A DNA stretch of 64,000 nt. It comes from Octopus bimaculoides (lineage: Eukaryota). The notes under the pieces were generated by a model. The model did not search any database. It was not told the DNA's origin and worked only from the letters and a program-made list of their open reading frames with translations. The position numbers and the translations under genes are program-made. Where the stretch lies: the NCBI RefSeq assembly GCF_001194135.2, contig NC_069009.1, positions 8,489,900-8,553,899 of the forward strand. Direction: 5' to 3'. The stretch's first letter is position 1; each line of letters starts with the position of its first letter. Positions 15,626-64,000 of the stretch are shown here, piece by piece.

Positions 15626-16658
15626 CTCACACTATTAAGGCGGTACTCCAGCATGGCCACAGTAAAATGACTGAAACAAAAGAATAAAAGAATATGCATA
15701 ACTACGTGTGGGGGTGGGGTATATGAGTAAATCAAAAATAGAAACAGCAAAGTCAAATGGATGTACACAGTGAATGTATTAAGTTTATACTCAGTCTAAA
15801 AGAGGGGATGTGTTGTTTCAAGCGTAGCTCTTCATCAGAAAGAGGAAAAGTCCAGAGAGAAGGGGAAAAAATAGTCTGAGAAAAACTTGTGCTGTTACAT
15901 GGCTGATATGTGTATGCACTCTCTCGCTTTCTCTCTCTCGCTATCTCTCTCTATCTCTCTTTCTCTCTCTCTATATATATATATGTGTGTGTGTGTGTGT
16001 ATGTATACAGACATATATATAATATAAGGCATGTGGAGTTGTGGTTAGTCTACTGCACTCATGATTGCTAGATCATAGGTTCAGTTGCCAGACTGGGCAG
16101 CGCATGGTGTTCTTGAACAAAACACTTCATTTCATGCTGCTCTAGTTGCCCTTTCGATCAAGCGGGGAGTGTTAGATTGCTCACCTAACCAGTGGGATCA
16201 TGTCATTCAATAGCTAAAACAATGCAAAGCACATTGTGACTAGTGATGTGTAACAACATCTGATAGTCTGGTTGGTCACATGGGCAGATACCTACAAAGT
16301 TCTCAGAGTGACACGAATTTGGTTAACTATATCAAACAATCAGGCACCAATAAATTGAAGTTGAATTAACATCCAAAGTAATTCTTTGTGTATGACTAGT
16401 AAATTCAGCCATCACTCAGAACATTATATTTCTTCTGTTTGTATGCGTTCATCTATTCAGAGTTCATTTTGAATTTAACCCACTGTGGATTTCCTTGATA
16501 ATATATTTTCAGACATATATTTTCAGATATATTAATTTGACTTTTATTTCAGACTTTTTTTTTACTGTATCTAAATATACTGGCACAATAGAAATGATTG
16601 TTGGTAATTATGGAGTAATCATCAAATAAAGATGGAATTTTCTCCATTCCTGTTTTTG

Positions 16659-17757
16659 TTATATATATATATGTATATATAAACAAATAGTAAATGAGTA
16701 TATGCATATATACGTACAGGTATGTGCATACCGACATCCACCTGTATGTATAGGTGCATATCTGGGTACAGGACATTGCAAACAAAACAGAGACGAGAAA
16801 ACACACAAGCCACATAGAGAACATTCTACTTCATCAGCTACCTCCGTTTTAACACCGGCGTTTCGAAGAGCTAGGCAGGACGCATCATTAAAACAGCTCT
16901 TCCCATGGACCGCAAATTAAATTTGTATACACAAATTAAATCTTGCCATGGAGGAATGTTGTGGTGGATAAAAAACAAGACAGGAAAACAAACAGAAAAG
17001 GCTTTACGGCCAGACGGTTAANNNNNNNNNNNNNNNNNNNNNNNNNNNNNNNNNNNNNNNNNNNNNNNNNNNNNNNNNNNNNNNNNNNNNNNNNNNNNNN
17101 NNNNNNNNNNNNNNNNNNNNNNNNNNNNNNNNNNNNNNNNNNNNNNNNNNNNNNNNNNNNNNNNNNNNNNNNNNNNNNNNNNNNNNNNNNNNNNNNNNNN
17201 NNNNNNNNNNNNNNNNNNNNNNNNNNNNNNNNNNNNNNNNNNNNNNNNNNNNNNNNNNNNNNNNNNNNNNNNNNNNNNNNNNNNNNNNNNNNNNNNNNNN
17301 NNNNNNNNNNNNNNNNNNNNNNNNNNNNNNNNNNNNNNNNNNNNNNNNNNNNNNNNNNNNNNNNNNNNNNNNNNNNNNNNNNNNNNNNNNNNNNTTATAT
17401 ATATATATGTATATATAAACAAATAGTAAATGAGTATATGCATATATACGTACAGGTATGTGCATACCGACATCCACCTGTATGTATAGGTGCATATCTG
17501 GGTACAGGACATTGCAAACAAAACAGAGACGAGAAAACACACAAGCCACATAGAGAACATTCTACTTCATCAGCTACCTCCGTTTTAACACCGGCGTTTC
17601 GAAGAGCTAGGCAGGATGCATCGTTAAAACAGCTCTTCCCATGGACCGCAAATTAAATTTGTATACACAAATTAAATCTTGCCATGGAGGAATGTTGTGG
17701 TGGATAAAAAACAAGACAGGAAAACAAACAGAAAAGGCTTTACGGCCAGACGGTTAA
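16659..17757. repeat. 363-bp direct duplication flanking an assembly gap
   Basis: 16659-17021 repeated at 17395-17757 with 2 substitutions; probably a contig-overlap or haplotype artefact. Confidence 0.8.
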
Positions 17758-18090
17758 TCTTTACTCATTTGCCTGATTTCTGTTGAGCCATTGTGTATTT
17801 CAGTGTAATTTGGTGGTTAATTTGAGGATTTAGTTCCTCTTTCTAGCAAGTAGGCACCTCTGTTATAAATATAAATTTTATTCTGTAGCTATTTAATGCT
17901 ATTATTGCTTGCTACCACCTTTATTTTTGTTGTTATTATTATTATTGGTGTTGCAGTTCTGGGATCCCATTGGGGAAGAAGCTTTCATCCTGTTGGTCAA
18001 AAAAAGTCATCAACAGCAGATATAACACCTACATCACTGTGATACTAGTTCCCAGCCATATGTTTTTTTTCATGTTGGAGAACAGATGGT

Positions 18091-28177: not shown

Positions 28178-28704
28178 GTAAACCACAATGTGCATTTGTT
28201 CTTTTTTGTTGTTGATTTTTGTCCTGTGCCTCCCCTTCACCTGATCACTTCTCTGGCCACCAGCTATAATCAGAGGACCATTTAATTCAGAAAACTTGGC
28301 TGTAGTAAGATGAGATCAATACCTTTTTTTTTTTCTCTTGTTTATATAATCTTTATTAAGAAATATTTCTCTTGAGCCCAGCAGACAAAATAGAAAAGGC
28401 TTTGCTCCAGAGGATGGCAAGAGAGACATACTGGAACAGCTATTCTACCTCACAGGGCTTGCACTTGCAGACAGCCATCTCTGCTATCGAAGCAGCCATC
28501 TCTGCTATAGCCCTGGGCTGACTAATGGCTTGTGAGTTGATTTGGCAGATGGAAAGTAAAAGTAGCCCATACATAAGTGTATGCGCATGTGCATTTTTCC
28601 TTTTTAGGGGTCAGTTCAGTTTCTACATAAATTACATGTTTTTCTCTCCCTAGGCGTCATTTGGGTTTATACGTACATTACATGTTTCTTTTTTCTTTCC
28701 TTAG

Positions 28705-28772
28705 GGGTCAGTTGAGTTTCTACTGCTCCAGTTTGGTCTTTGTACATTCAAACTAAACCCTGAGACACAGCA
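28705..28772 (+). CDS. PARN: PARN exon 4 (68 nt, GSVEFLLLQFGLCTFKLNPETQQ)
   Basis: ccttag|GGGTCA...CAGCA|gtaagt; QFGLCTF motif. Confidence 0.96.
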
Positions 28773-46432: not shown

Positions 46433-46696
46433 TTAGGGTTGGGGGTTAACTGCAGGATTAGCATTAGAGCTGAGAGCACTATAGTTAGGGTTGGGGGTTA
46501 ACTGCAGGATTAGCATTAGAGCTGAGAGCACTATAGTTAGGGTTANNNNNNNNNNGCACTATAGTTAGGGTTGGAGGTTAACTGCAGGATTAGCATTAGA
46601 GCTGAGAGCACTATAGTTAGGGTTGGGGGTTAACTGCAGGATTAGCATTAGAGCTGAGAGCACTATAGTTAGGGTTAGGGTTAGGGTTTAGGGTTT
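46433..46696 (+). repeat. 52-bp telomere-like minisatellite ending in (TTAGGG)3
   Basis: Unit TTAGGGTTGGGGGTTAACTGCAGGATTAGCATTAGAGCTGAGAGCACTATAG at 46433, 46485, 46565 and 46617, with a 10-N gap inside, then TTAGGG x3 + TTTAGGG. Confidence 0.92.
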
Positions 46697-47460: not shown

Positions 47461-48794
47461 GTAAGCTCTACTTGTTGTTATTTAGCCTCAGGTCAAACAT
47501 GATCCAGAACTCCTATGATCAAAAATGATTCCTGCTGTGACAACCCTATCTTCTATATAGACATAGTATAGCTGAGACTACGTTATCTAATATATAGTGG
47601 TTAGTATCTAGCATCAGTTGTCAGTTAGTCTTTTTCCAGCACTTATGATCAAAAATGATCCAGTAGTCACCCTATGATGTTTTATTCCAACATGCTAAAC
47701 ATTTCGCCTGGCATGCTTACGATTCTGCCAGCTCACCGCCAGCATGCTCAATATCTCTGTAGATTAGTTATAAACACACAATTTTATTTTAGTGTTATAA
47801 GTGGTCAATGCACAAACAAACTTCCTTTTTTTATAAGTAGATATGCGGGTGACACGTAAAAGCACCCACTACACTCTCTGAGTGGTTGGCGTTAGGAAGG
47901 GCATCCAGCTGTAGAAACTCTGCCAAATTAGATTGGAGCCTGGTGTTGCCATCCGGTTTCACCAGTCCTCAGTCAAATCGTCCAACCCATGCTAGCATGG
48001 AAAGCGGACGTTAAACGATGATGATGATGATGATGATGATGATGGTAAAGGGTAAGGGTAAAGACCCCCTTCAGTCATGAATGACCATGGGATTGCACCT
48101 GGAAAATTCCCCCTCTGAGACACAAGTCCGGGCAAGGTTGTTTATGGAAGACCAGCAATCATCCGTGCGTACCAGCCTCCCCTCTCCACACCACCAATTC
48201 GAACCAAGGGGAAGATAAAGGCCAATACAGCTTGGCATCAATGATGTTGCAACTCATTTCTACAGTTGAGTGAACTGGAGCAACATGAAATAAAGTGTCT
48301 TGCTCAAGAACACAACAAATGGCCCTGTCCAGGAATCAAACTCACTACCTTGTGACTGTGAGCCCAATGCTCTAACCACTGAGCCATGTGCCTTCATTTA
48401 TAAGTTTATAGATTAGCTGTTAATATGCTATAAGTTCTCAAGGCAGTGAGCTGGAGAAATTTTCATGCTGGACAAAATGCTTTATGGTATTTTGTCTGTC
48501 TTCATGTTCCAAGTTCAAATTCGACTTTGTCTTTCATCCTTTTGGGGTTGATAAAGTAAGTAACTGGGGTCTATATAATTGACTTACTCTCTCCTCCGAA
48601 GTTGCTAGCCTTGTGCCAAAATTTGAAACTAATATGCTAACATGTGTTGTGTGGTAAGAAGTTTGCTTCTCAATCACATGGTTCTAGGTTCAGTCCCACT
48701 GCGTGGCACCTTCAGCAAATGTATTCTACTATAGACTTGGGCCAACCAAAGCCTTGTGAGTGGATTTGGTAGACAGAAACTGAAAGAAGCCTGT

Positions 48795-52567: not shown

Positions 52568-52624
52568 ACAAAACTTGACCAAGCTGTGGGTTTCAGCAAG
52601 ATAATCAGGTTAATATCTAGCAGT
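52568..52624 (+). CDS. PARN: PARN exon 10 (57 nt, TKLDQAVGFSKIIRLISSS)
   Basis: tttcag|ACAAAA...AGCAGT|gtaagt; AVGFS motif. Confidence 0.95.
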
Positions 52625-53475
52625 GTAAGTATCTACAACAACCATCGTCCATATATCACCACCACCACCACCACTACTACATTGCTACTTCTACCAGCCA
52701 TACATCATCACTAACTCTATTACAACATACATATACTACCACCTCTACCTGCACTATGTCACCACTACTTCTCTAGTGGTGCCATGCTATATTCACCAAT
52801 ACTACCGCCTATACTACCTCTACCACATTTACTTTCTCTACTAGAGTGCTATCATTGTTGGACACAAAGCTACTGGACATGTACACTATACCACTATTAC
52901 TTTTACTGCTACATATACACCACTACTATTGCCTAGACTACATCTACTTTCTCTACTACACTGCAATCATTGTTGGACACATTATATATATGTATGTGCC
53001 TNNNNNNNNNNNNNNNNNNNNNNNNNNNNNNNNNNNNNNNNNNNNNNNNNNNNNNNNNNNNNNNNNNNNNNNNNNNNNNNNNNNNNNNNNNNNNNNNNNN
53101 NNNNNNNNNNNNNNNNNNNNNNNNNNNNNNNNNNNNNNNNNNNNNNNNNNNNNNNNNNNNNNNNNNNNNNNNNNNNNNNNNNNNNNNNNNNNNNNNNNNN
53201 NNNNNNNNNNNNNNNNNNNNNNNNNNNNNNNNNNNNNNNNNNNNNNNNNNNNNNNNNNNNNNNNNNNNNNNNNNNNNNNNNNNNNNNNNNNNNNNNNNNN
53301 NNNNNNNNNNNNNNNNNNNNNNNNNNNNNNNNNNNNNNNNNNNNNNNNNNNNNNNNNNNNNNNNNNNNNNNNNNNNNNNNNNNNNNNNNNNNNNNNNNNN
53401 NNNNNNNNNNNNNNNNNNNNNNNNNNNNNNNNNNNNNNNNNNNNNNNNNNNNNNNNNNNNNNNNNNNNNNNNNNN

Positions 53476-53516
<41 letters not shown>

Positions 53517-53651
53517 TATATATATTTTGGACCTGTACCTGTTGTTGGGGGGACACACACATATATATATATATGCTATGCTGCTGCCACTACCCTTACT
53601 ACCACACATACAACTACCCATGCTTCATCTCTCACTTTCTCTCTCACCCAG

Positions 53652-53729
53652 GGCACTGTCGTTGTTGGACACAACATGTTACTGGACATCATTCATATTC
53701 TACACCAATTCCATTCTCCTCTGCCACAG
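53652..53729 (+). CDS. PARN: PARN exon 11 (78 nt, GTVVVGHNMLLDIIHILHQFHSPLPQ; third DEDD aspartate)
   Basis: acccag|GGCACT...CCACAG|gtcagt; GHNMLLD motif; not recovered in frame by the ORF track. Confidence 0.96.
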
Positions 53730-55244
53730 GTCAGTATTATTGTTTTTTTCTTTCATTGCTTTGTGGCCATCCTGGGATACACACCATCTTCAAGGGACAA
53801 AAGTGATGTGACTTTTAGTTGCCCATATTGACAACAATCACAACACTCCTTCCATGGACTTCTTTAGTCCTTTGTATTGATTGCTCTTCTAATGAACAGC
53901 TAGGTTTACCTACTGAGTGAGTTAATGTCTGTTTAAAGTTCCTCCATTGTAACAGAGTAAAAACTCAGAGAATTTATTCATACAAGTGAACCCCAACACA
54001 TTCATGTCCATGAACCAATACTGGCACTCTGTTGGTCACAACAAAGAGGGTTCCACTCGATCTGATCAATGGAACAGTCTGCTTTTGAAGTTAATGTGCA
54101 AGTGGCTGAACACTCCACAGAAATGTGTATCCTTAATGTAATTCTCAGGGAGATTCAGCATGACATAGAGTGTAACAAGGCTGGCCCTTTGAAATATGGG
54201 TACTACTCACTTTTGCTAGCTGAGTGGACTGGAGCAATGTGAAATACAGTGTCTTGCTCAGGGACACAACATGTTGCTGGAAATTGAACTCATGACTTTA
54301 CGATTGTAAGCCAAATACCCTAACCACTAAGCCATGTGCTTTCCACATGAGAGAGGTTACATGTGGTCAGTTGCTATTCAGTTGGCAAAAATGAGTAATC
54401 CTGCAACAGACCAACATCACATTCAGGGAGGAATATATCATCATCACCATTATTTAATATGTCTGCCTTCCATGCTGGCATGGGTTGGACAGTTTGACAG
54501 GTGCCAGTCAAGCAGAAGATTACACCAGACTTCTGTGTCTGTTTTTATGGCTGGATACCCTTCCTAACACCAACCACCCCACAGAGCGGACAGTTCTTTT
54601 TACATGACACAAGCTCAGGTGAGGTCAGTTTTGGCATGGTTTTGATGGCTGGATGCCCTTCCAAATACCAGCCACCCTGCAAAGTGGACTGAGTGCTTTT
54701 TATGTGGCACCAGCACAGGTGAGNNNNNNNNNNTCCAAATACCAGCCACCCTGCAAAGTGGACTGAGTGCTTTTTATGTGGCACCAGCACAGGTGAGGTC
54801 AGTTTTGGCATGGTTTTGATGGCTGGATGCCCTTCCAAATGCTAATCACTTCACATTGTAGACTGGATGCTTTTTATGTGGCATATATATGCACCACAGG
54901 AACTGGGAAACCAGCTCTATGAGTCTATATGACTCTGGGAGTATCATGATCCTTTATCCTGCAAGAAATAGTTAGTCAAACCAACTTTAAATCACAATAT
55001 CACTGCTTGCTTCACCATCTCAAATGAGGATGACTTCATTGTATAGAAATATGAATGGATGGGTTGAAGAGGCACACTAAAGCAACATCACACCTTTTCA
55101 CCAGATACTCTTCCTGCCTCTGACTGTCACCTATTTCCAACTTAGGTAATATTTTCCTATGGCTGGACATATTTTCATGAATGATTAGAAATGACAGTGA
55201 AACTCATTTACGACAATTGCATGATGTCAAAGCAAGAAGACAAA

Positions 55245-55286
<42 letters not shown>

Positions 55287-55364
55287 AGACTTTCAGCTTC
55301 CATATATCAAATCCACTTCATCTGTGTGTGTGTGTGAGTGCAATTATAGTGAAAGCACATTGCT

Positions 55365-55985
55365 TAGTGGTTAGTGTACTTCACTGACAATCATAAGGTT
55401 GTAAGTTCAATTCCCAGTGACGTGTTGTGCCCTTGAACAAGACACTTTATTTCACATTGCTCCAGTCCACTCAGCTAGCAAAAATGAGTTGTGTCTGTGT
55501 CACGCTGAATCTCCCTCAGAACTACATTAAGGGTACACATGTCTGTGGAGTGCTCAGCCACTTGCACGTTAATTTCACAAGCAGGCTGTTCCATTGACTG
55601 GATCAACTGGAACCCTCATTGTCATTGTGTGTGTGTGTGTGTGTGTAAGTATATGTATAGTAAAGACGTATTGCTTAGTGGTTAGGGCACTCCACTGACA
55701 ATTCTAAGGCCGTGAGTTCAATTCCCTGCAGTGCATTGTGTCCTTGAGCAAGACACTTTATTTCACATTGCTCCATTCCACTCAGCTGGCAAAAATGAGT
55801 TGTACCTGTAATTCAAAAGGGCCAGCTTTTATGCATTCTGTGCCATGCTGAATCCCCCTGAGAACTACATTAACTGTACCCATGTCTGTGGAGTGCTCAA
55901 CCATTTGCGTGGTAATTTTCACGAGAAGGCTGTTCTGTTGATAAGATCAACTGGAAGCCTCATTGTTGTAATTGACTGAGTGCCA
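55365..55985 (+). mobile_element. Two tandem tRNA-derived SINEs (family E, GTGTCCTTGAGCAAGACAC...CAAAAATGAGT)
   Basis: Heads GCTTAGTGGTTAG...GTTCAATTCCC near 55365 and 55670; other copies at 16030-16280, 48050-48400 (-), 54020-54340 (-), 57012-57230 (-), 60040-60325. Confidence 0.8.
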
Positions 55986-57012: not shown

Positions 57013-57410
57013 CTCTTTCCACACCACCAATGGCATCCAAGGGAAAGGCAAAGGCCAATACAGTTTGGCACCAGTGATGTCGCAACTCATTTCTACAATT
57101 GAGTGAACTGGAGCAACGTGAAATAAAGTGTCTTGCTCAAGAACACAACACACAGCCCAGTCGGGGAATCGAACTCACTACCTCATAAGTGTGATCCTGA
57201 TGCTCTAACCACTGGGCCATGTACCTTCACGTACTCATTGCCTGTATAGCCACTAAGTTTAGCAGTACAACATTATTGGATGGACCAATTTTACATATTG
57301 AACACATTCCTGGCAGCTAGGCAGAAACGGAATTAATTCTGTAACAAAACCCTTGATAGAACACACACATGCACACATGCATCTCTAACCCCTTTTTGTC
57401 TCTCTTACAG

Positions 57411-57497
57411 GAATATGAAGAGTTTAAGGGTTTCTTACATTCGCAGTTTCCCAACTTGATCGACACAAAACTCATGGCAAGCACCAGTCCATTCAGA
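57411..57497 (+). CDS. PARN: PARN exon 12 (87 nt, EYEEFKGFLHSQFPNLIDTKLMASTSPFR)
   Basis: ttacag|GAATAT...TTCAGA|gtgagt; FPxLxDTKLMAST motif. Confidence 0.96.
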
Positions 57498-59456: not shown

Positions 59457-62164
59457 GTAAGTATGTGTGTGTATGTGTGTGTGTCTACGTGCATGTATCT
59501 CACTCTCTCTAATCCTGGGTAGCTTCAATAACACCTCACCTTCGGTCTATTGTTGTCGTGTTTAACCCCAGGTCAGCTCTGATGAAGTAGTCTTAAGATC
59601 AAAGATATTCTAACCATGTCCATCCTGTCTCTTAATCTTTCAGTAACTACAGTGTATCATTTATGATTGTAAGGTGTAATTTGAGGGAAATGTGACTGCT
59701 ATTTCTAGCATTGCAACCTAGTCTATCTCATGTTTTCTGCATATCAGGAACCACTTTGAATAATGTGCCCTTTTCCTTTAAGAGAGAAGGATGTGATTTG
59801 AGGGAGATTTTACTGCTATTTCTTGCATTTTAATGCAATACTGTTAGACAGACAGAGAGTGATAACCTAATACCTCTTCACCTTCTTTTATAGTTTTCCC
59901 CTTCACTAGTTCCCCATTTCTGCCTCTTCCCACCCCTCACAAGAAACAAAATTTTATGTACAGTACAGTATATTAGAGTAGACGTATTAATTAAATATCT
60001 AATCACTTAAAACCAACATTATATTATTAATTACAATCATGAGGTAGTGAGTTCAATTCTCAGACTGGGCTGTGTGTTGTGCTCTTGAGCAAGACAGTTT
60101 ATTTCATGTTGCTCCAATTCACTCAGCTGTAGAAATGAGTTGCAATGTCACTGGTGCCAAGCTGTATCGGCCCCTTATCCTTTCCCGTTGGATAACATGG
60201 GTATCGTGGAGAGAAGGGAGGCTGGTATGCAAGGGGCAACTGCTGGTCTTCCATAAACAACCTTGCCCAGACTTATGCCTTGCAGGGGAATTTTCTAGGT
60301 GCAATTCCATGGTCATTCATGACCGAAGGTCTTTACCCTTTATTCTGTTCTCCCTCTCTTCCATTCTCCCTCTGAGGGTTTTAGGGGCTCATAGTGATGT
60401 CACTAGTGCTGGTACTACAATAACATGTACCCAGAACACTCTGTAAAGTGGTTGGTGAAGCCATCTAGAGTCCTGATGACTCTTTGACTTTTAAACCAGC
60501 CATATCCAGCCAAAATATTCTCTGTTTTATCTTCAAACTGGCCAGATCTGGCCTCTCACACCTACACGACAATATTATTCTAAAAATAAACAATCACATC
60601 ATTGAAAAACTCAAAGCTACAAGGTAAAGCTTGACTAATTTAAGTCAACGTGAATAATAAGCATTACATTCGACTGAGAAATTTGAATGCTAATTGGTTA
60701 ATCTTATTGAGAACAAGGAAACTGCTCTTCCGCTGTTGTTATGAGACAGTATTGCCCCAGGGTTAGGAAAACCATCTAGCTAAGTCAAAAGGAAGACAAC
60801 CAACTGAGATGTGGTCCCCCAAGCCCATGTAGTTTGGAGAACCACATCTTCAAGTAAGAACTGACCAGACTGTAATGAACCCTGTGGTTTTCAGGGGTCT
60901 ATAGGGGTTCTTATAAGATTTTGTTGTTAAATTGGTTGTGTTTCTACAATAAACAAAATATATTAATGATTTTTTTATGCAGTTTTTGATAATATTAATC
61001 AGAAAAATATGATAGGACTTTTTTAAACATTGAATAGCTACGAGGTCCCACCCAAATAAAATATATATCAAAGGGGTCCTTAGGCAAAAGATGATTGAGG
61101 ACTACTGATCTGACCCATGCCAACATGGGAAACAAATGTAAAATAGTGATGAGGACATATAATCAACAGCAATTGATTATGTATTATTAATTTAGCTTTA
61201 ATTAGTGTCTTTATGTATTATTAATTTAGATGGTACATACCCAGAGGTGTTCAGACCAATCCTTCTGGTTGTATAAAGCACCAATGGCACAGGTACCACG
61301 TAATAGCACCTGTGTGGCAACACGTAAAGGTGCCTGTGCAGTGACACATAAAAGTGTCCATGCAGTGCCATGCAAAAGTACCCAGCACACTTTTTGAAGT
61401 GGTTGGTGTTAGGAAGGGCATCCAGTTGTAGAAACCATGCCAAATCAGGCAGGAGTCTGGTACAACACCCCCGCCCCCACCCCATCTTGCCAGCTCTGGT
61501 CACACCTTCCAACCCATACCAGCATGGACAACGGACGTTAAATGATAATGATAATGATGATAATTTCTTTAGTGAAAAAAGAAAATGCAGGAAGACCATT
61601 GAAATTATCATCATCATCATATGTCTGTTTTCCATACTGTCATGGGTTGGACGTTTCAACCAGAGCTGGTAAGACCAGGGGCTGCTTCAAGCTCTATTGT
61701 CTGTTCTGGCATGGTTTCTACAGCTGGATGCCCTTCCTAATGCCAACTACTCCACAGAGTGTATTAGGTGCTTTCTATGTGGCACCGGCACCAGTGCTTT
61801 CTATGTGGCACCAGCACCATTATCAATTCTGCTGTGGTAGACAGGTTCTCTTGAATACAACAATGTGCCAGACATCTCTGTTCTTAGTCATCTCCTTCAT
61901 AAGGTCAGTGTCTTGAGATGGGCCTTCAATACTTCATCCCGTGTCTACCTGGGTCTCCTTCTTCCACAAGTTCCATCCACTTTAAGTGATCGACACTTCT
62001 CAATCTAAATCTGATTTCTCACCACTGGATTCTCCAAAATTGCTTCCATAGAATTCTGAAATTTCCTTGAGGTGGTGCAAGGAGAATTCCCTACACCTAC
62101 CTTCCAATTAAGAATTGAGGATAAAAGTATGTAATCTCAACTGTCTGTGTCCTCTTTTCACCAG

Positions 62165-63801: not shown

Positions 63802-64000
63802 NNNNNNNNNNCACAAACATATGTACATCTTTCAGTTTCCATCTACCAAATCCACTCACAAAGCTTTGGTCAGCCTGAGGCTATAGCAGAAGACTCTTGC
63901 CTAAGTGCTACACAGTGGGACTGAACCCGGAACCATGTGGTTGGTAAGCAAGCTTCTTACCACACAGCTACACCTGCACTTGTATATATATATATATATA

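What the first reader, a model, noticed from the sequence alone, without database searches (positions are those of the whole stretch)
52790..53729. Echo copies of the catalytic exon 11 junction, with a possible in-frame pseudo-exon
Seen: upstream of exon 11 (ACTTTCTCTCTCACCCAG|GGCACTGTCGTTGTTGGACACAACATGTTACTGGACATC) lie decayed copies with a 115-bp period. Copy A at 52831 reads ACTTTCTCTACTAG|AGTGCTATCATTGTTGGACACAAAGCTACTGGACATG (AG intact, 2-nt deletion). Copy B at 52946 has AG changed to AC. A possible third is near 53541, and the 474-N gap may hide more. From copy A's AG, 52845-52991 is a stop-free 147-nt in-frame segment (SAIIVGHKATG...) ending at a GTATGT donor-like site. Inference: if spliced in place of exon 11 it would remove the GHNMLLD aspartate and give a nuclease-dead isoform; if spliced in addition it would add 49 aa. 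This is the second such echo in one gene.
Basis: partly seen in the sequence, partly recalled or inferred. Interest (0 to 1): 0.7.

Follow-up and report, generated by a model that had tools for sequence, protein, structure and literature searches.

The report
Decayed splice-junction duplicates in octopus PARN intron
Two decayed copies of the start of a catalytic exon, each with its upstream splice signal, sit in the preceding intron of the octopus PARN deadenylase gene; they look like old, harmless leftovers of small local duplications, not a hidden alternative exon.

Summary
The window is the Octopus bimaculoides PARN gene. Exon 11 (53652-53729) encodes GTVVVGHNMLLD. Copies A (52799-52881) and B (52903-52981) of its 3' splice junction are real: z = 12 and 5.3 against shuffles, 115-nt period, found nowhere else in the loci held. 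Both copies occur at the same place in the gap-free introns of O. sinensis and O. vulgaris. Those introns hold exactly two copies, and only background similarity where the O. bimaculoides gap lies. The proposed third copy (53541) is at background level.

A and B share derived changes, so one old echo was duplicated again. They diverge between species at the general intron rate, and copy B lost its AG only in O. bimaculoides.

The 147-nt stop-free segment exists, but all three frames of this G-poor intron are nearly stop-free. Its donor scores at the 2nd percentile of true donors. Five equally good in-frame, stop-free candidates occur in this gene's introns. No annotated isoform or database protein contains its peptide.

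Exon 4 has a clean three-unit tandem array of the same kind.

Best reading: neutral fossils of small duplications spanning a 3' splice site. Use in RNA remains untested.

The parts
52568..52624 (+). PARN exon 10 (TKLDQAVGFSKIIRLISSS), donor AGT|gtaagt
   Evidence: Exact match to O. bimaculoides PARN protein P0123. Donor scores 9.1 bits.
52625..52798 (+). 5' part of intron 10: C-rich, G-poor CAC/TAC-type low-complexity tract with no recognisable junction copy
   Evidence: Junction probe scores 18, which is background (189/500 shuffles reach it). The orthologous O. sinensis stretch (L002 36525-36700) has the same composition as the 56-nt tail before O. sinensis exon 11.
52799..52881 (+). Echo copy A: about 46 nt of intron tail, AG at 52843-44, then about 37 nt of exon 11 head with a 2-nt deletion
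   Evidence: 61/84 identity to 53608-53689. z = 12 against shuffles. Orthologous copies in O. sinensis and O. vulgaris.
52903..52981 (+). Echo copy B: intron tail, AC at 52958-59 (AG in the sister species), then 22 nt of exon head
   Evidence: 84% identical to A at 115-nt spacing. z = 5.3 against the exon 11 junction. The AG is intact in O. sinensis and O. vulgaris.
52845..52991 (+).
   Evidence: Translation has no stop. The same arrangement at 129 nt occurs in the sister species. The donor is weak and the base rate of such candidates is high. No protein or isoform evidence.
53002..53475 (.). Assembly gap inside intron 10 (474 N, length estimated)
   Evidence: The same gap is in assembly v2. 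The orthologous stretch in gap-free species is about 400 nt: a short TA-rich run, then about 360 nt that match nothing else in the loci held, with no junction copy.
53539..53562 (+). Proposed 'third copy': not supported
   Evidence: 19/24 identity with 2 gaps, score 19, equal to background. No counterpart in O. sinensis or O. vulgaris.
53596..53729 (+). Source junction: 56-nt C-rich intron tail, AG at 53650-51, then exon 11 (53652-53729, GTVVVGHNMLLD...)
   Evidence: Acceptor scores 7.7 bits.
28594..28772 (+). Second echo in the gene: head-to-tail array of units at 28594-28639 and 28640-28690, then the real unit from 28691, which runs into exon 4 (28705-28772)
   Evidence: the repeat finder family D1. 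Acceptor probe scores 50 against a background maximum of 26. Conserved in O. sinensis and O. vulgaris. Using either echo AG would bring in a premature stop.

Best explanation
Copies A and B are neutral fossils of small local duplications that spanned the 3' splice junction of PARN exon 11.

Proposed history:
1. A segment holding at least 56 nt of intron tail (a length that could hold the branch point as well as the pyrimidine tract and AG) plus about 38 nt of exon head was copied upstream, in direct orientation.
2. The downstream copy stayed a complete 3' splice site joined to the intact exon, so the mRNA did not change. The upstream copy became intron sequence.
3. That echo was later duplicated again, giving A and B (115-nt period in O. 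bimaculoides, 109 nt in the sister species).
4. An insertion of different base composition, about 400 nt long in O. sinensis, probably then separated the echoes from the real junction.

The copies have since drifted at the intron rate.

Shown:
- The homology, orientation and period of the copies.
- The sister relation of A and B.
- Presence in three Octopus species and absence in a cuttlefish.
- Neutral-looking divergence between species.
- A clean, uninterrupted tandem array of the same type at exon 4.

Inferred:
- That the first step was a tandem duplication.
- That the spacer is a later insertion.
- That the echoes are not spliced to any meaningful degree.
For: - Homology crosses the AG, covering intron tail and exon head together in direct orientation. 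It is far above chance.
- The A/B unit matches only itself, its partner and the exon 11 junction in the window, O. sinensis, O. vulgaris and cuttlefish loci, so it is not a dispersed repeat.
- A and B share derived states against exon 11: ATCATT vs GTCGTT, and CTCTACTAG vs CTCTCACCCAG.
- K2P distances: A-B 0.17-0.22; A or B to the source junction 0.41-0.60; orthologous copies between O. bimaculoides and O. sinensis 0.05-0.07. Both steps therefore predate the split of the three species.
- The cuttlefish PARN gene has the same intron positions and no echo at any of 22 exons.
- Echo-region identity between species is 93-95%, against an intron background of 93%.
- The AG of copy B is lost in one lineage only.
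- Exon 4 shows three head-to-tail units of 46-51 nt, the last running into the exon. This is the pattern a tandem junction duplication predicts.
- In O. sinensis the 5' part of the intron and the 56-nt tail share one composition (C 0.33-0.39, G 0.05-0.06). The spacer between them differs (C 0.14, G 0.17) and has no similarity to the 5' part.
- Small tandem duplications that create or reshape introns are documented (PMC3265369, PMC2891723, PMC4974935).
Against: - Copy B and the real junction are about 480 nt apart in the gap-free species, not one unit length. A simple tandem origin therefore needs a later insertion, and I found no transposon hallmark or second copy of the spacer in about 200 kb.
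- The pseudo-exon keeps an open frame, a length divisible by three and the GTATGT in all three species. All three indels inside it are multiples of three. That is what weak coding constraint would look like, although slippage in a trinucleotide-like repeat gives the same result.
- Two of 15 acceptors carrying local-only echoes exceeds the 1.1% local-only background if only that class is tested (p about 0.01).
- No RNA data were examined.
Confidence: 0.77

Rival explanations
1. Copy A's AG and the GTATGT define a cassette pseudo-exon. Spliced in addition to exon 11 it adds 49 aa. Spliced in its place it removes the His and Asp of GHNMLLD and gives a nuclease-dead PARN isoform.
For: - The AG with a pyrimidine tract scores 6.1 bits, the 20th percentile of true acceptors and the 97th of decoy AGs.
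- The segment is stop-free and phase-compatible in three species, at 147 or 129 nt, and the GTATGT is retained.
Against: - The donor is at the 2nd percentile of true donors.
- Five equally good in-frame, stop-free candidates exist in this gene's introns.
- All frames of this intron are nearly stop-free.
- There is no conservation above the intron background.
- No annotated isoform has the insert.
- No database protein carries the peptide.
- The insert would sit inside the CAF1 nuclease domain, immediately before the GHNMLLD motif encoded by exon 11.
Confidence: 0.05
2. The echo acceptors are kept as decoy or poison 3' splice sites. They bind U2AF/U2 and tune productive PARN splicing. At exon 4 their use would give transcripts with premature stops; at exon 11 it would give an insertion.
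For: - Two acceptor echoes occur in one gene, both retained in three species and mostly with the AG intact.
- Use of either exon 4 echo AG gives a premature stop.
- 2/15 acceptors against 1.1% local-only background.
Against: - Divergence is at the neutral intron rate.
- Copy B's AG is lost in O. bimaculoides.
- Counting all 60 junction-by-direction tests, 2 hits against 0.66 expected gives p about 0.14.
- With dispersed repeats included, 7% of arbitrary probes have a local match.
- Retention in three species is expected anyway, because they differ by only about 7% at neutral sites.
Confidence: 0.07
3. The copies arose by a non-tandem route, such as a template switch or double-strand-break repair that pasted a junction fragment a few hundred nt upstream. 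In that case the spacer is original intron sequence.
For: - About 480 nt separate copy B from the source junction in the gap-free species.
- The spacer has no repeat or transposon signature in the sequence held.
Against: - The 5' part of the intron and the 56-nt tail share an unusual composition that the spacer interrupts.
- The A-to-B step and the exon 4 array are plainly head-to-tail.
Confidence: 0.1
4. Artefact: chance similarity in low-complexity sequence, or a mis-assembly next to the gap.
For: The copies lie within 160 nt of a gap, in CAC/TAC-rich sequence. Elsewhere in the window, near-identical duplicates flank other gaps.
Against: - z = 12 and 5.3 against dinucleotide shuffles.
- The same two copies are present in two independent gap-free assemblies of other species.
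Confidence: 0.01

Closest known systems
Intron creation or remodelling by small tandem genomic duplication (Rogers model; Hellsten et al. 2011, PMC3265369; Lehmann et al. 2010, PMC2891723; potato RdRp case, PMC4974935)
   Same: A short local direct duplication carries splice-signal sequence. One copy of former exon sequence ends up inside an intron, and the mRNA is preserved because one full set of signals remains.
   Different: Those cases duplicate an exonic AGGT proto-splice site and create a new intron. Here the duplication spans an existing 3' splice site, so it only lengthens an old intron whose position is shared with cuttlefish, and leaves an exon-head fossil.
Tandem exon duplication giving mutually exclusive or cassette exons (Kondrashov and Koonin 2001; Letunic et al. 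2002; recalled from my own knowledge, not read here)
   Same: A direct local copy of exon sequence with an acceptor sits upstream of the parent exon.
   Different: Only the first 38 of 78 nt were copied. A 2-nt deletion shifts the frame after GH. The candidate donor is not homologous to the exon 11 donor. The copies have decayed at the neutral rate.
Junction duplications reported as human disease alleles that create competing 3' splice sites (recalled from my own knowledge; my literature search, did not retrieve a specific open-access example)
   Same: Duplicating intron tail plus exon head creates two AGs in tandem, and the outcome depends on which one is used.
   Different: Those are recent and deleterious. 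The octopus copies are ancient and fixed, and they appear to be tolerated.
Octopus tRNA-derived SINE in intron 11 (54100-54345)
   Same: It contains GGACACAACATGTTGCTGGA, 19/20 identical to exon 11 (53667-53686), and translates to GHNMLLEI.
   Different: It belongs to a dispersed family whose other copies read differently at that site. It lacks the acceptor and the CTGTCGTTGTTGG part, so it is a chance resemblance and not an echo.

Membership tests
Duplication spanning a 3' splice junction (junction echo) | Homology runs uninterrupted across the AG, covering both intron tail and exon head, in direct orientation | tested here: met
   A: 52799-52880 vs 53608-53689. B: 52903-52981 vs 53596-53673.
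Duplication spanning a 3' splice junction (junction echo) | Similarity exceeds chance for this composition | tested here: met
   z = 12 (A) and 5.3 (B), 0/500 dinucleotide shuffles. The score also exceeds all 375 background chunks.
Duplication spanning a 3' splice junction (junction echo) | Head-to-tail spacing equals the unit length (strict tandem) | tested here: inconclusive
   Met for A to B (115 nt) and for the exon 4 array (46-51 nt). Not met for B to the real junction, which are about 480 nt apart in gap-free species. A compositionally foreign spacer lies between them.
Duplication spanning a 3' splice junction (junction echo) | Local only, not a dispersed repeat | tested here: met
   No other copy in the window, L002, L003 or L004.
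Alternative exon born by tandem exon duplication | The whole exon is copied with both splice sites, and length and phase are kept | tested here: not met
   Only 38 (A) or 22 (B) of 78 nt were copied. A 2-nt deletion is present. The donor is not homologous.
Alternative exon born by tandem exon duplication | The copy encodes a homologous, constrained peptide | tested here: not met
   SAIIVGHKATGH... loses NMLLD. Divergence equals the intron background.
Functional cassette or poison pseudo-exon | Splice sites within the range of true sites | tested here: inconclusive
   Acceptor at the 20th percentile of true sites, donor at the 2nd. The weight matrix was built from only 41 sites.
Functional cassette or poison pseudo-exon | Conservation above the neutral intron level | tested here: not met
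   93-95% against a 93% background. Copy B's AG is lost in O. bimaculoides.
Functional cassette or poison pseudo-exon | Transcript or protein evidence of inclusion | not testable with these tools
   No RNA reads are available here. Indirectly, there is no annotated isoform and no matching protein among 5.8 billion clusters.
Dispersed SINE or transposon fragment | Several copies elsewhere in the genome | tested here: not met
   Not met for A and B. Met for the separate GHNMLLEI element at 54262.

The most novel reading that the evidence does not exclude
The echo acceptors are used. In Octopus PARN, duplicated 3' splice modules upstream of exons 4 and 11 act as regulated decoy or poison sites. 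The exon 4 echoes would give transcripts with premature stops. Echo A would give a 147-nt in-frame insert, or replace exon 11 and yield a catalytically dead PARN. More broadly, junction echoes may be enriched at acceptors genome-wide and so be a distinct route of intron growth and splice regulation in cephalopods.
Probability: 0.07. Interest if true: 0.5.

Novelty: new member of a known kind. Interest (0 to 1): 0.22.

Why it matters
As it stands, this is a tidy, datable example of how a small duplication across a 3' splice site can be absorbed silently and lengthen an intron. It has a clean three-unit counterpart at exon 4 of the same gene.

It is also a caution for scanning. In a G-poor, low-complexity intron, an in-frame stop-free segment with an AG and a GT is common: five occur in this gene alone.

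It would matter more if a genome-wide scan showed such echoes enriched at acceptors, or if RNA data showed the echo sites are used. Either result would add a mechanism of intron growth or of unproductive-splicing control in cephalopods.

Tried and rejected
- A 45-aa query of exons 10+11 against the protein collection found nothing because it was too short. A 387-aa model then identified Octopus PARN.
- Tandem Repeats Finder does not detect either echo array because they are too diverged. TRF counts were therefore unusable as a control.
- The tblastn hit GHNMLLEI at 54262 looked like a downstream echo. It lies inside a dispersed SINE, so I rejected it.
- The third copy at 53541 scores at background and is absent from the sister species.
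- I looked for an older copy in the first 166 nt of the intron (around 52760) and found nothing above shuffles.
- I tested the hypothesis of one large (about 480 nt) tandem unit. The 5' part of the intron and the spacer share no similarity.
- I tested whether the spacer is a repeat. It has no second copy in about 200 kb, apart from its TA run.
- Inverted repeats that could pair with exon 11, such as an RNA-editing complementary site: only N-run and low-complexity artefacts turned up.
- A search for the pseudo-exon peptide, using three species' versions as an alignment, found no protein at E <= 10.
- The literature search for junction-duplication disease alleles returned nothing specific.

Full report
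**Identity of the locus.** A tblastn search with a PARN sequence placed PARN exons in order on the + strand from about 26 kb to 63 kb. A 387-aa model built from those hits matched PARN of Octopus at 98% identity (P0001, O. sinensis and O. vulgaris). The cluster also holds the O. bimaculoides isoforms X1 and X2 (P0123, P0122). The window encodes the O. bimaculoides variant (ECIDLIQKS), and its exons translate exactly to P0123. The refined junctions are:
- exon 10: 52568-52624
- exon 11: 53652-53729
- exon 12: starting at 57411

Exon 11 is 78 nt, phase 0, and encodes GTVVVGHNMLLDIIHILHQFHSPLPQ, which includes the GHNMLLD motif the finding calls catalytic.

**The gap, tested first.** The 474-N gap (53002-53475) lies inside intron 10.
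The candidate pseudo-exon (52845-52991) ends 10 nt before the gap, and exon 11 starts 176 nt after it.
- I fetched the same gene from three assemblies: O. bimaculoides v2 (L001), O. sinensis (L002) and O. vulgaris (L003).
- L001 is letter-for-letter identical to the window over 52568-53729 and keeps the same gap.
- L002 and L003 have no gaps. Their intron 10 is 817 and 811 nt.
- The left flank of the window aligns with them up to the gap edge. The right flank aligns from about 53598 into exon 11. The stretch 53476-53597 is a (TA)n run plus poorly alignable sequence.
- Order and orientation across the gap are therefore sound. Its true length is probably near the estimate.

**The observation.** Copies A and B are real.
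- The repeat finder reports a three-member family: 52812-52866, 52927-52981 (84% identity, 115-nt spacing) and 53619-53673.
It gives B 52903-52981 against 53596-53673 at 60/87.
- Against 500 dinucleotide-preserving shuffles, no shuffle reached the score of A (z = 12) or B (z = 5.3).
- The exon 11 acceptor probe's score upstream (41) exceeds all 375 background chunks of the window.
- The A/B unit matches only itself, its partner and the exon 11 junction in the window, L002, L003 and the cuttlefish locus. It is not a dispersed repeat.
- The proposed third copy near 53541 scores 19, which equals the background mean. It has no counterpart in the sister species.

**What the gap may hide.** In both gap-free species the intron reads as follows: a CAC/TAC-rich 5' part, copy A, copy B, a short TA-rich run, about 360 nt of sequence with no second copy in the loci held, the conserved 56-nt C-rich tail, then exon 11. 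A sliding scan with the junction probe shows only A and B above background. The stretch that corresponds to the gap scores 10-17. Extra hidden copies in O. bimaculoides cannot be excluded, but nothing suggests them.

**History of the copies.**
- A nine-sequence alignment (A, B and the real junction in three species) shows that A and B share derived states against the source: ATCATT for GTCGTT, and CTCTACTAG for CTCTCACCCAG.
- K2P distances are 0.17-0.22 for A-B, 0.41-0.60 for A or B against the source junction, and 0.05-0.07 for orthologous copies between O. bimaculoides and O. sinensis.
- So one junction fragment was copied long before these species split. That echo was duplicated again later, also before the split.
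- In the cuttlefish Acanthosepion pharaonis, PARN has the same intron positions, including the same 78-nt GHNMLLD exon. None of its 22 exons shows an echo. The events are therefore specific to the octopod lineage.
- In O. sinensis the 5' part of the intron and the 56-nt tail share an unusual composition (C 0.33-0.39, G 0.05-0.06). The spacer differs (C 0.14, G 0.17) and has no similarity to the 5' part.
- I read the spacer as a later insertion into an originally short, slippage-prone C-rich intron. I found no transposon signature or second copy of it, so this step is an inference.

**A second, cleaner case.**
- A systematic scan of all 15 internal exons in the window (acceptor and donor probes, upstream and downstream) gave two outliers above the local-match threshold of 41: the exon 11 acceptor upstream (41) and the exon 4 acceptor upstream (50, background maximum 26).
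- Two weaker values also exceeded their background maxima. The exon 11 acceptor downstream scored 36; this is the SINE described under side findings. The exon 3 donor downstream scored 28 (background maximum 24); this appears to be a low-complexity intron-to-intron match, and I did not follow it up.
- At exon 4, three units of 46-51 nt lie head to tail: 28594-28639, 28640-28690, and 28691 onward. Each has a pyrimidine tract, an AG and about 19 nt of exon head. The last unit continues into the real exon.
- This array is conserved in all three Octopus species.
- Using either echo AG would bring in a premature stop.
- This is what a tandem duplication across a 3' splice site should look like. It supports the same origin for the exon 11 echoes.

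**Is the pseudo-exon special?**
- The 147-nt segment is stop-free and followed by GTATGT. The sister species keep a 129-nt open, phase-compatible version with the same GTATGT.
- However, all three frames of the first 400 nt of this intron carry only one or two stops, so an open frame means little here.
- I built a position weight matrix from 41 true sites of the Octopus and cuttlefish genes. It puts copy A's acceptor at 6.1 bits (20th percentile of true acceptors; the real exon 11 acceptor scores 7.7). It puts the donor TAT|GTATGT at 4.2 bits, the 2nd percentile of true donors, and 6.5% of intronic GTs score as well or better.
- The window's PARN introns contain 78 acceptor/donor pairs at least this good and 50-250 nt apart. 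Of these, 27 have lengths divisible by three, and 5 are in frame and stop-free in the phase of their host intron.
- Identity between O. bimaculoides and O. sinensis is 93-95% in the echo region and 93% over 29.7 kb of aligned, mostly intronic, sequence.
- Copy B's AG is intact in O. sinensis and O. vulgaris and has become AC in O. bimaculoides.
- No RefSeq isoform of O. bimaculoides or O. sinensis has an insertion between SSS and GTVVV.
- An alignment query with the exon 10 plus pseudo-exon peptide of all three species found no protein at E <= 10 among 5.8 billion clusters.
- One observation points the other way. The three indels inside the segment are 9, 3 and 6 nt. Slippage in a CAC/TAC and TA repeat context predicts the same lengths.

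- With all repeats counted, 7% of arbitrary 70-nt probes in the window have a local match at or above the exon 11 score. On that basis 2 of 15 acceptors is unremarkable (binomial p about 0.28).
- With only local duplications that have no distant match, the rate is 1.1% upstream and 1.1% downstream.
- On that stricter basis 2/15 gives p about 0.01 if only the acceptor-upstream class is tested. It gives about 0.14 over all 60 junction-by-direction tests, which is the fair count for a post hoc pattern.
- A 64-kb window cannot settle this. A genome-wide scan is needed.

**Comparison with what is known.** Small tandem duplications that carry splice signals and turn former exon sequence into intron are documented as a route to new introns (PMC3265369, PMC2891723, PMC4974935). 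The octopus case differs in that it spans an existing 3' splice site and only lengthens an old intron. It is not a tandem exon duplication of the kind that gives mutually exclusive exons. Only the exon head was copied, the frame is broken after GH, and the candidate donor is unrelated to the exon 11 donor.

**Verdict.** The sequence observation is real and well above chance. Its best explanation is neutral decay of old duplications of the splice junction. The proposed nuclease-dead isoform is unsupported but was not tested at the RNA level.

**Side findings.**
- The GHNMLLEI match at 54262 is a chance resemblance inside a SINE.
- Near-identical duplicates flank two other gaps in the window.

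Noticed in passing
window 54100-54345 (core 54262-54285): A tRNA-like SINE in intron 11 contains GGACACAACATGTTGCTGGA. This is 19/20 identical to exon 11 (53667-53686) and translates to GHNMLLEI. Other family copies lie at 55351-55489(-), 55494-55563(-), 55670-55903(-), 48252-48395, 57100-57150 and 60075-60140(-), and they read differently at this site. It is a chance resemblance, not an echo.
   Followed up: yes
window 28594-28772: Exon 4 of PARN has a clean three-unit tandem array of its acceptor junction (46-51 nt units). It is conserved in O. sinensis and O. vulgaris. Using either echo AG would introduce a premature stop.
   Followed up: yes
window 16615-16999 vs 17420-17804; 46433-46544 vs 46556-46680: Near-identical duplicated sequence sits on both sides of two assembly gaps (17022-17394 and 46546-46555). 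At the second gap it is a 52-nt tandem unit. These may be real tandem repeats or collapsed or duplicated gap edges.
   Followed up: no
window 63980-63994 and protein P0123 C-terminus: The RefSeq isoform X1 of O. bimaculoides PARN (621 aa) ends in [36 protein letters not shown]. This looks like translation of TG/TA microsatellite sequence and not a real C-terminus. The O. sinensis protein ends in ...KQPAVQLFEKDDNW.
   Followed up: no
window 53476-53651: The 176 nt of read sequence between the gap and exon 11 contain no AG apart from the acceptor itself. In O. sinensis and O. vulgaris the nearest upstream AG is 72 nt away, just after a CTAAC branch-point-like motif.
   Followed up: partly
L002 36885-37290 (O. 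sinensis intron 10 spacer): A stretch of about 400 nt lies between echo B and the real intron tail. After its first 45 nt or so of TA-rich sequence it differs in base composition from the rest of the intron and has no other copy in about 200 kb. It may be an old insertion of unknown origin.
   Followed up: partly
window 54541-54870: A 98-nt tandem repeat (about 80% matches) spans a 10-N gap at 54724-54733 in intron 11.
   Followed up: no
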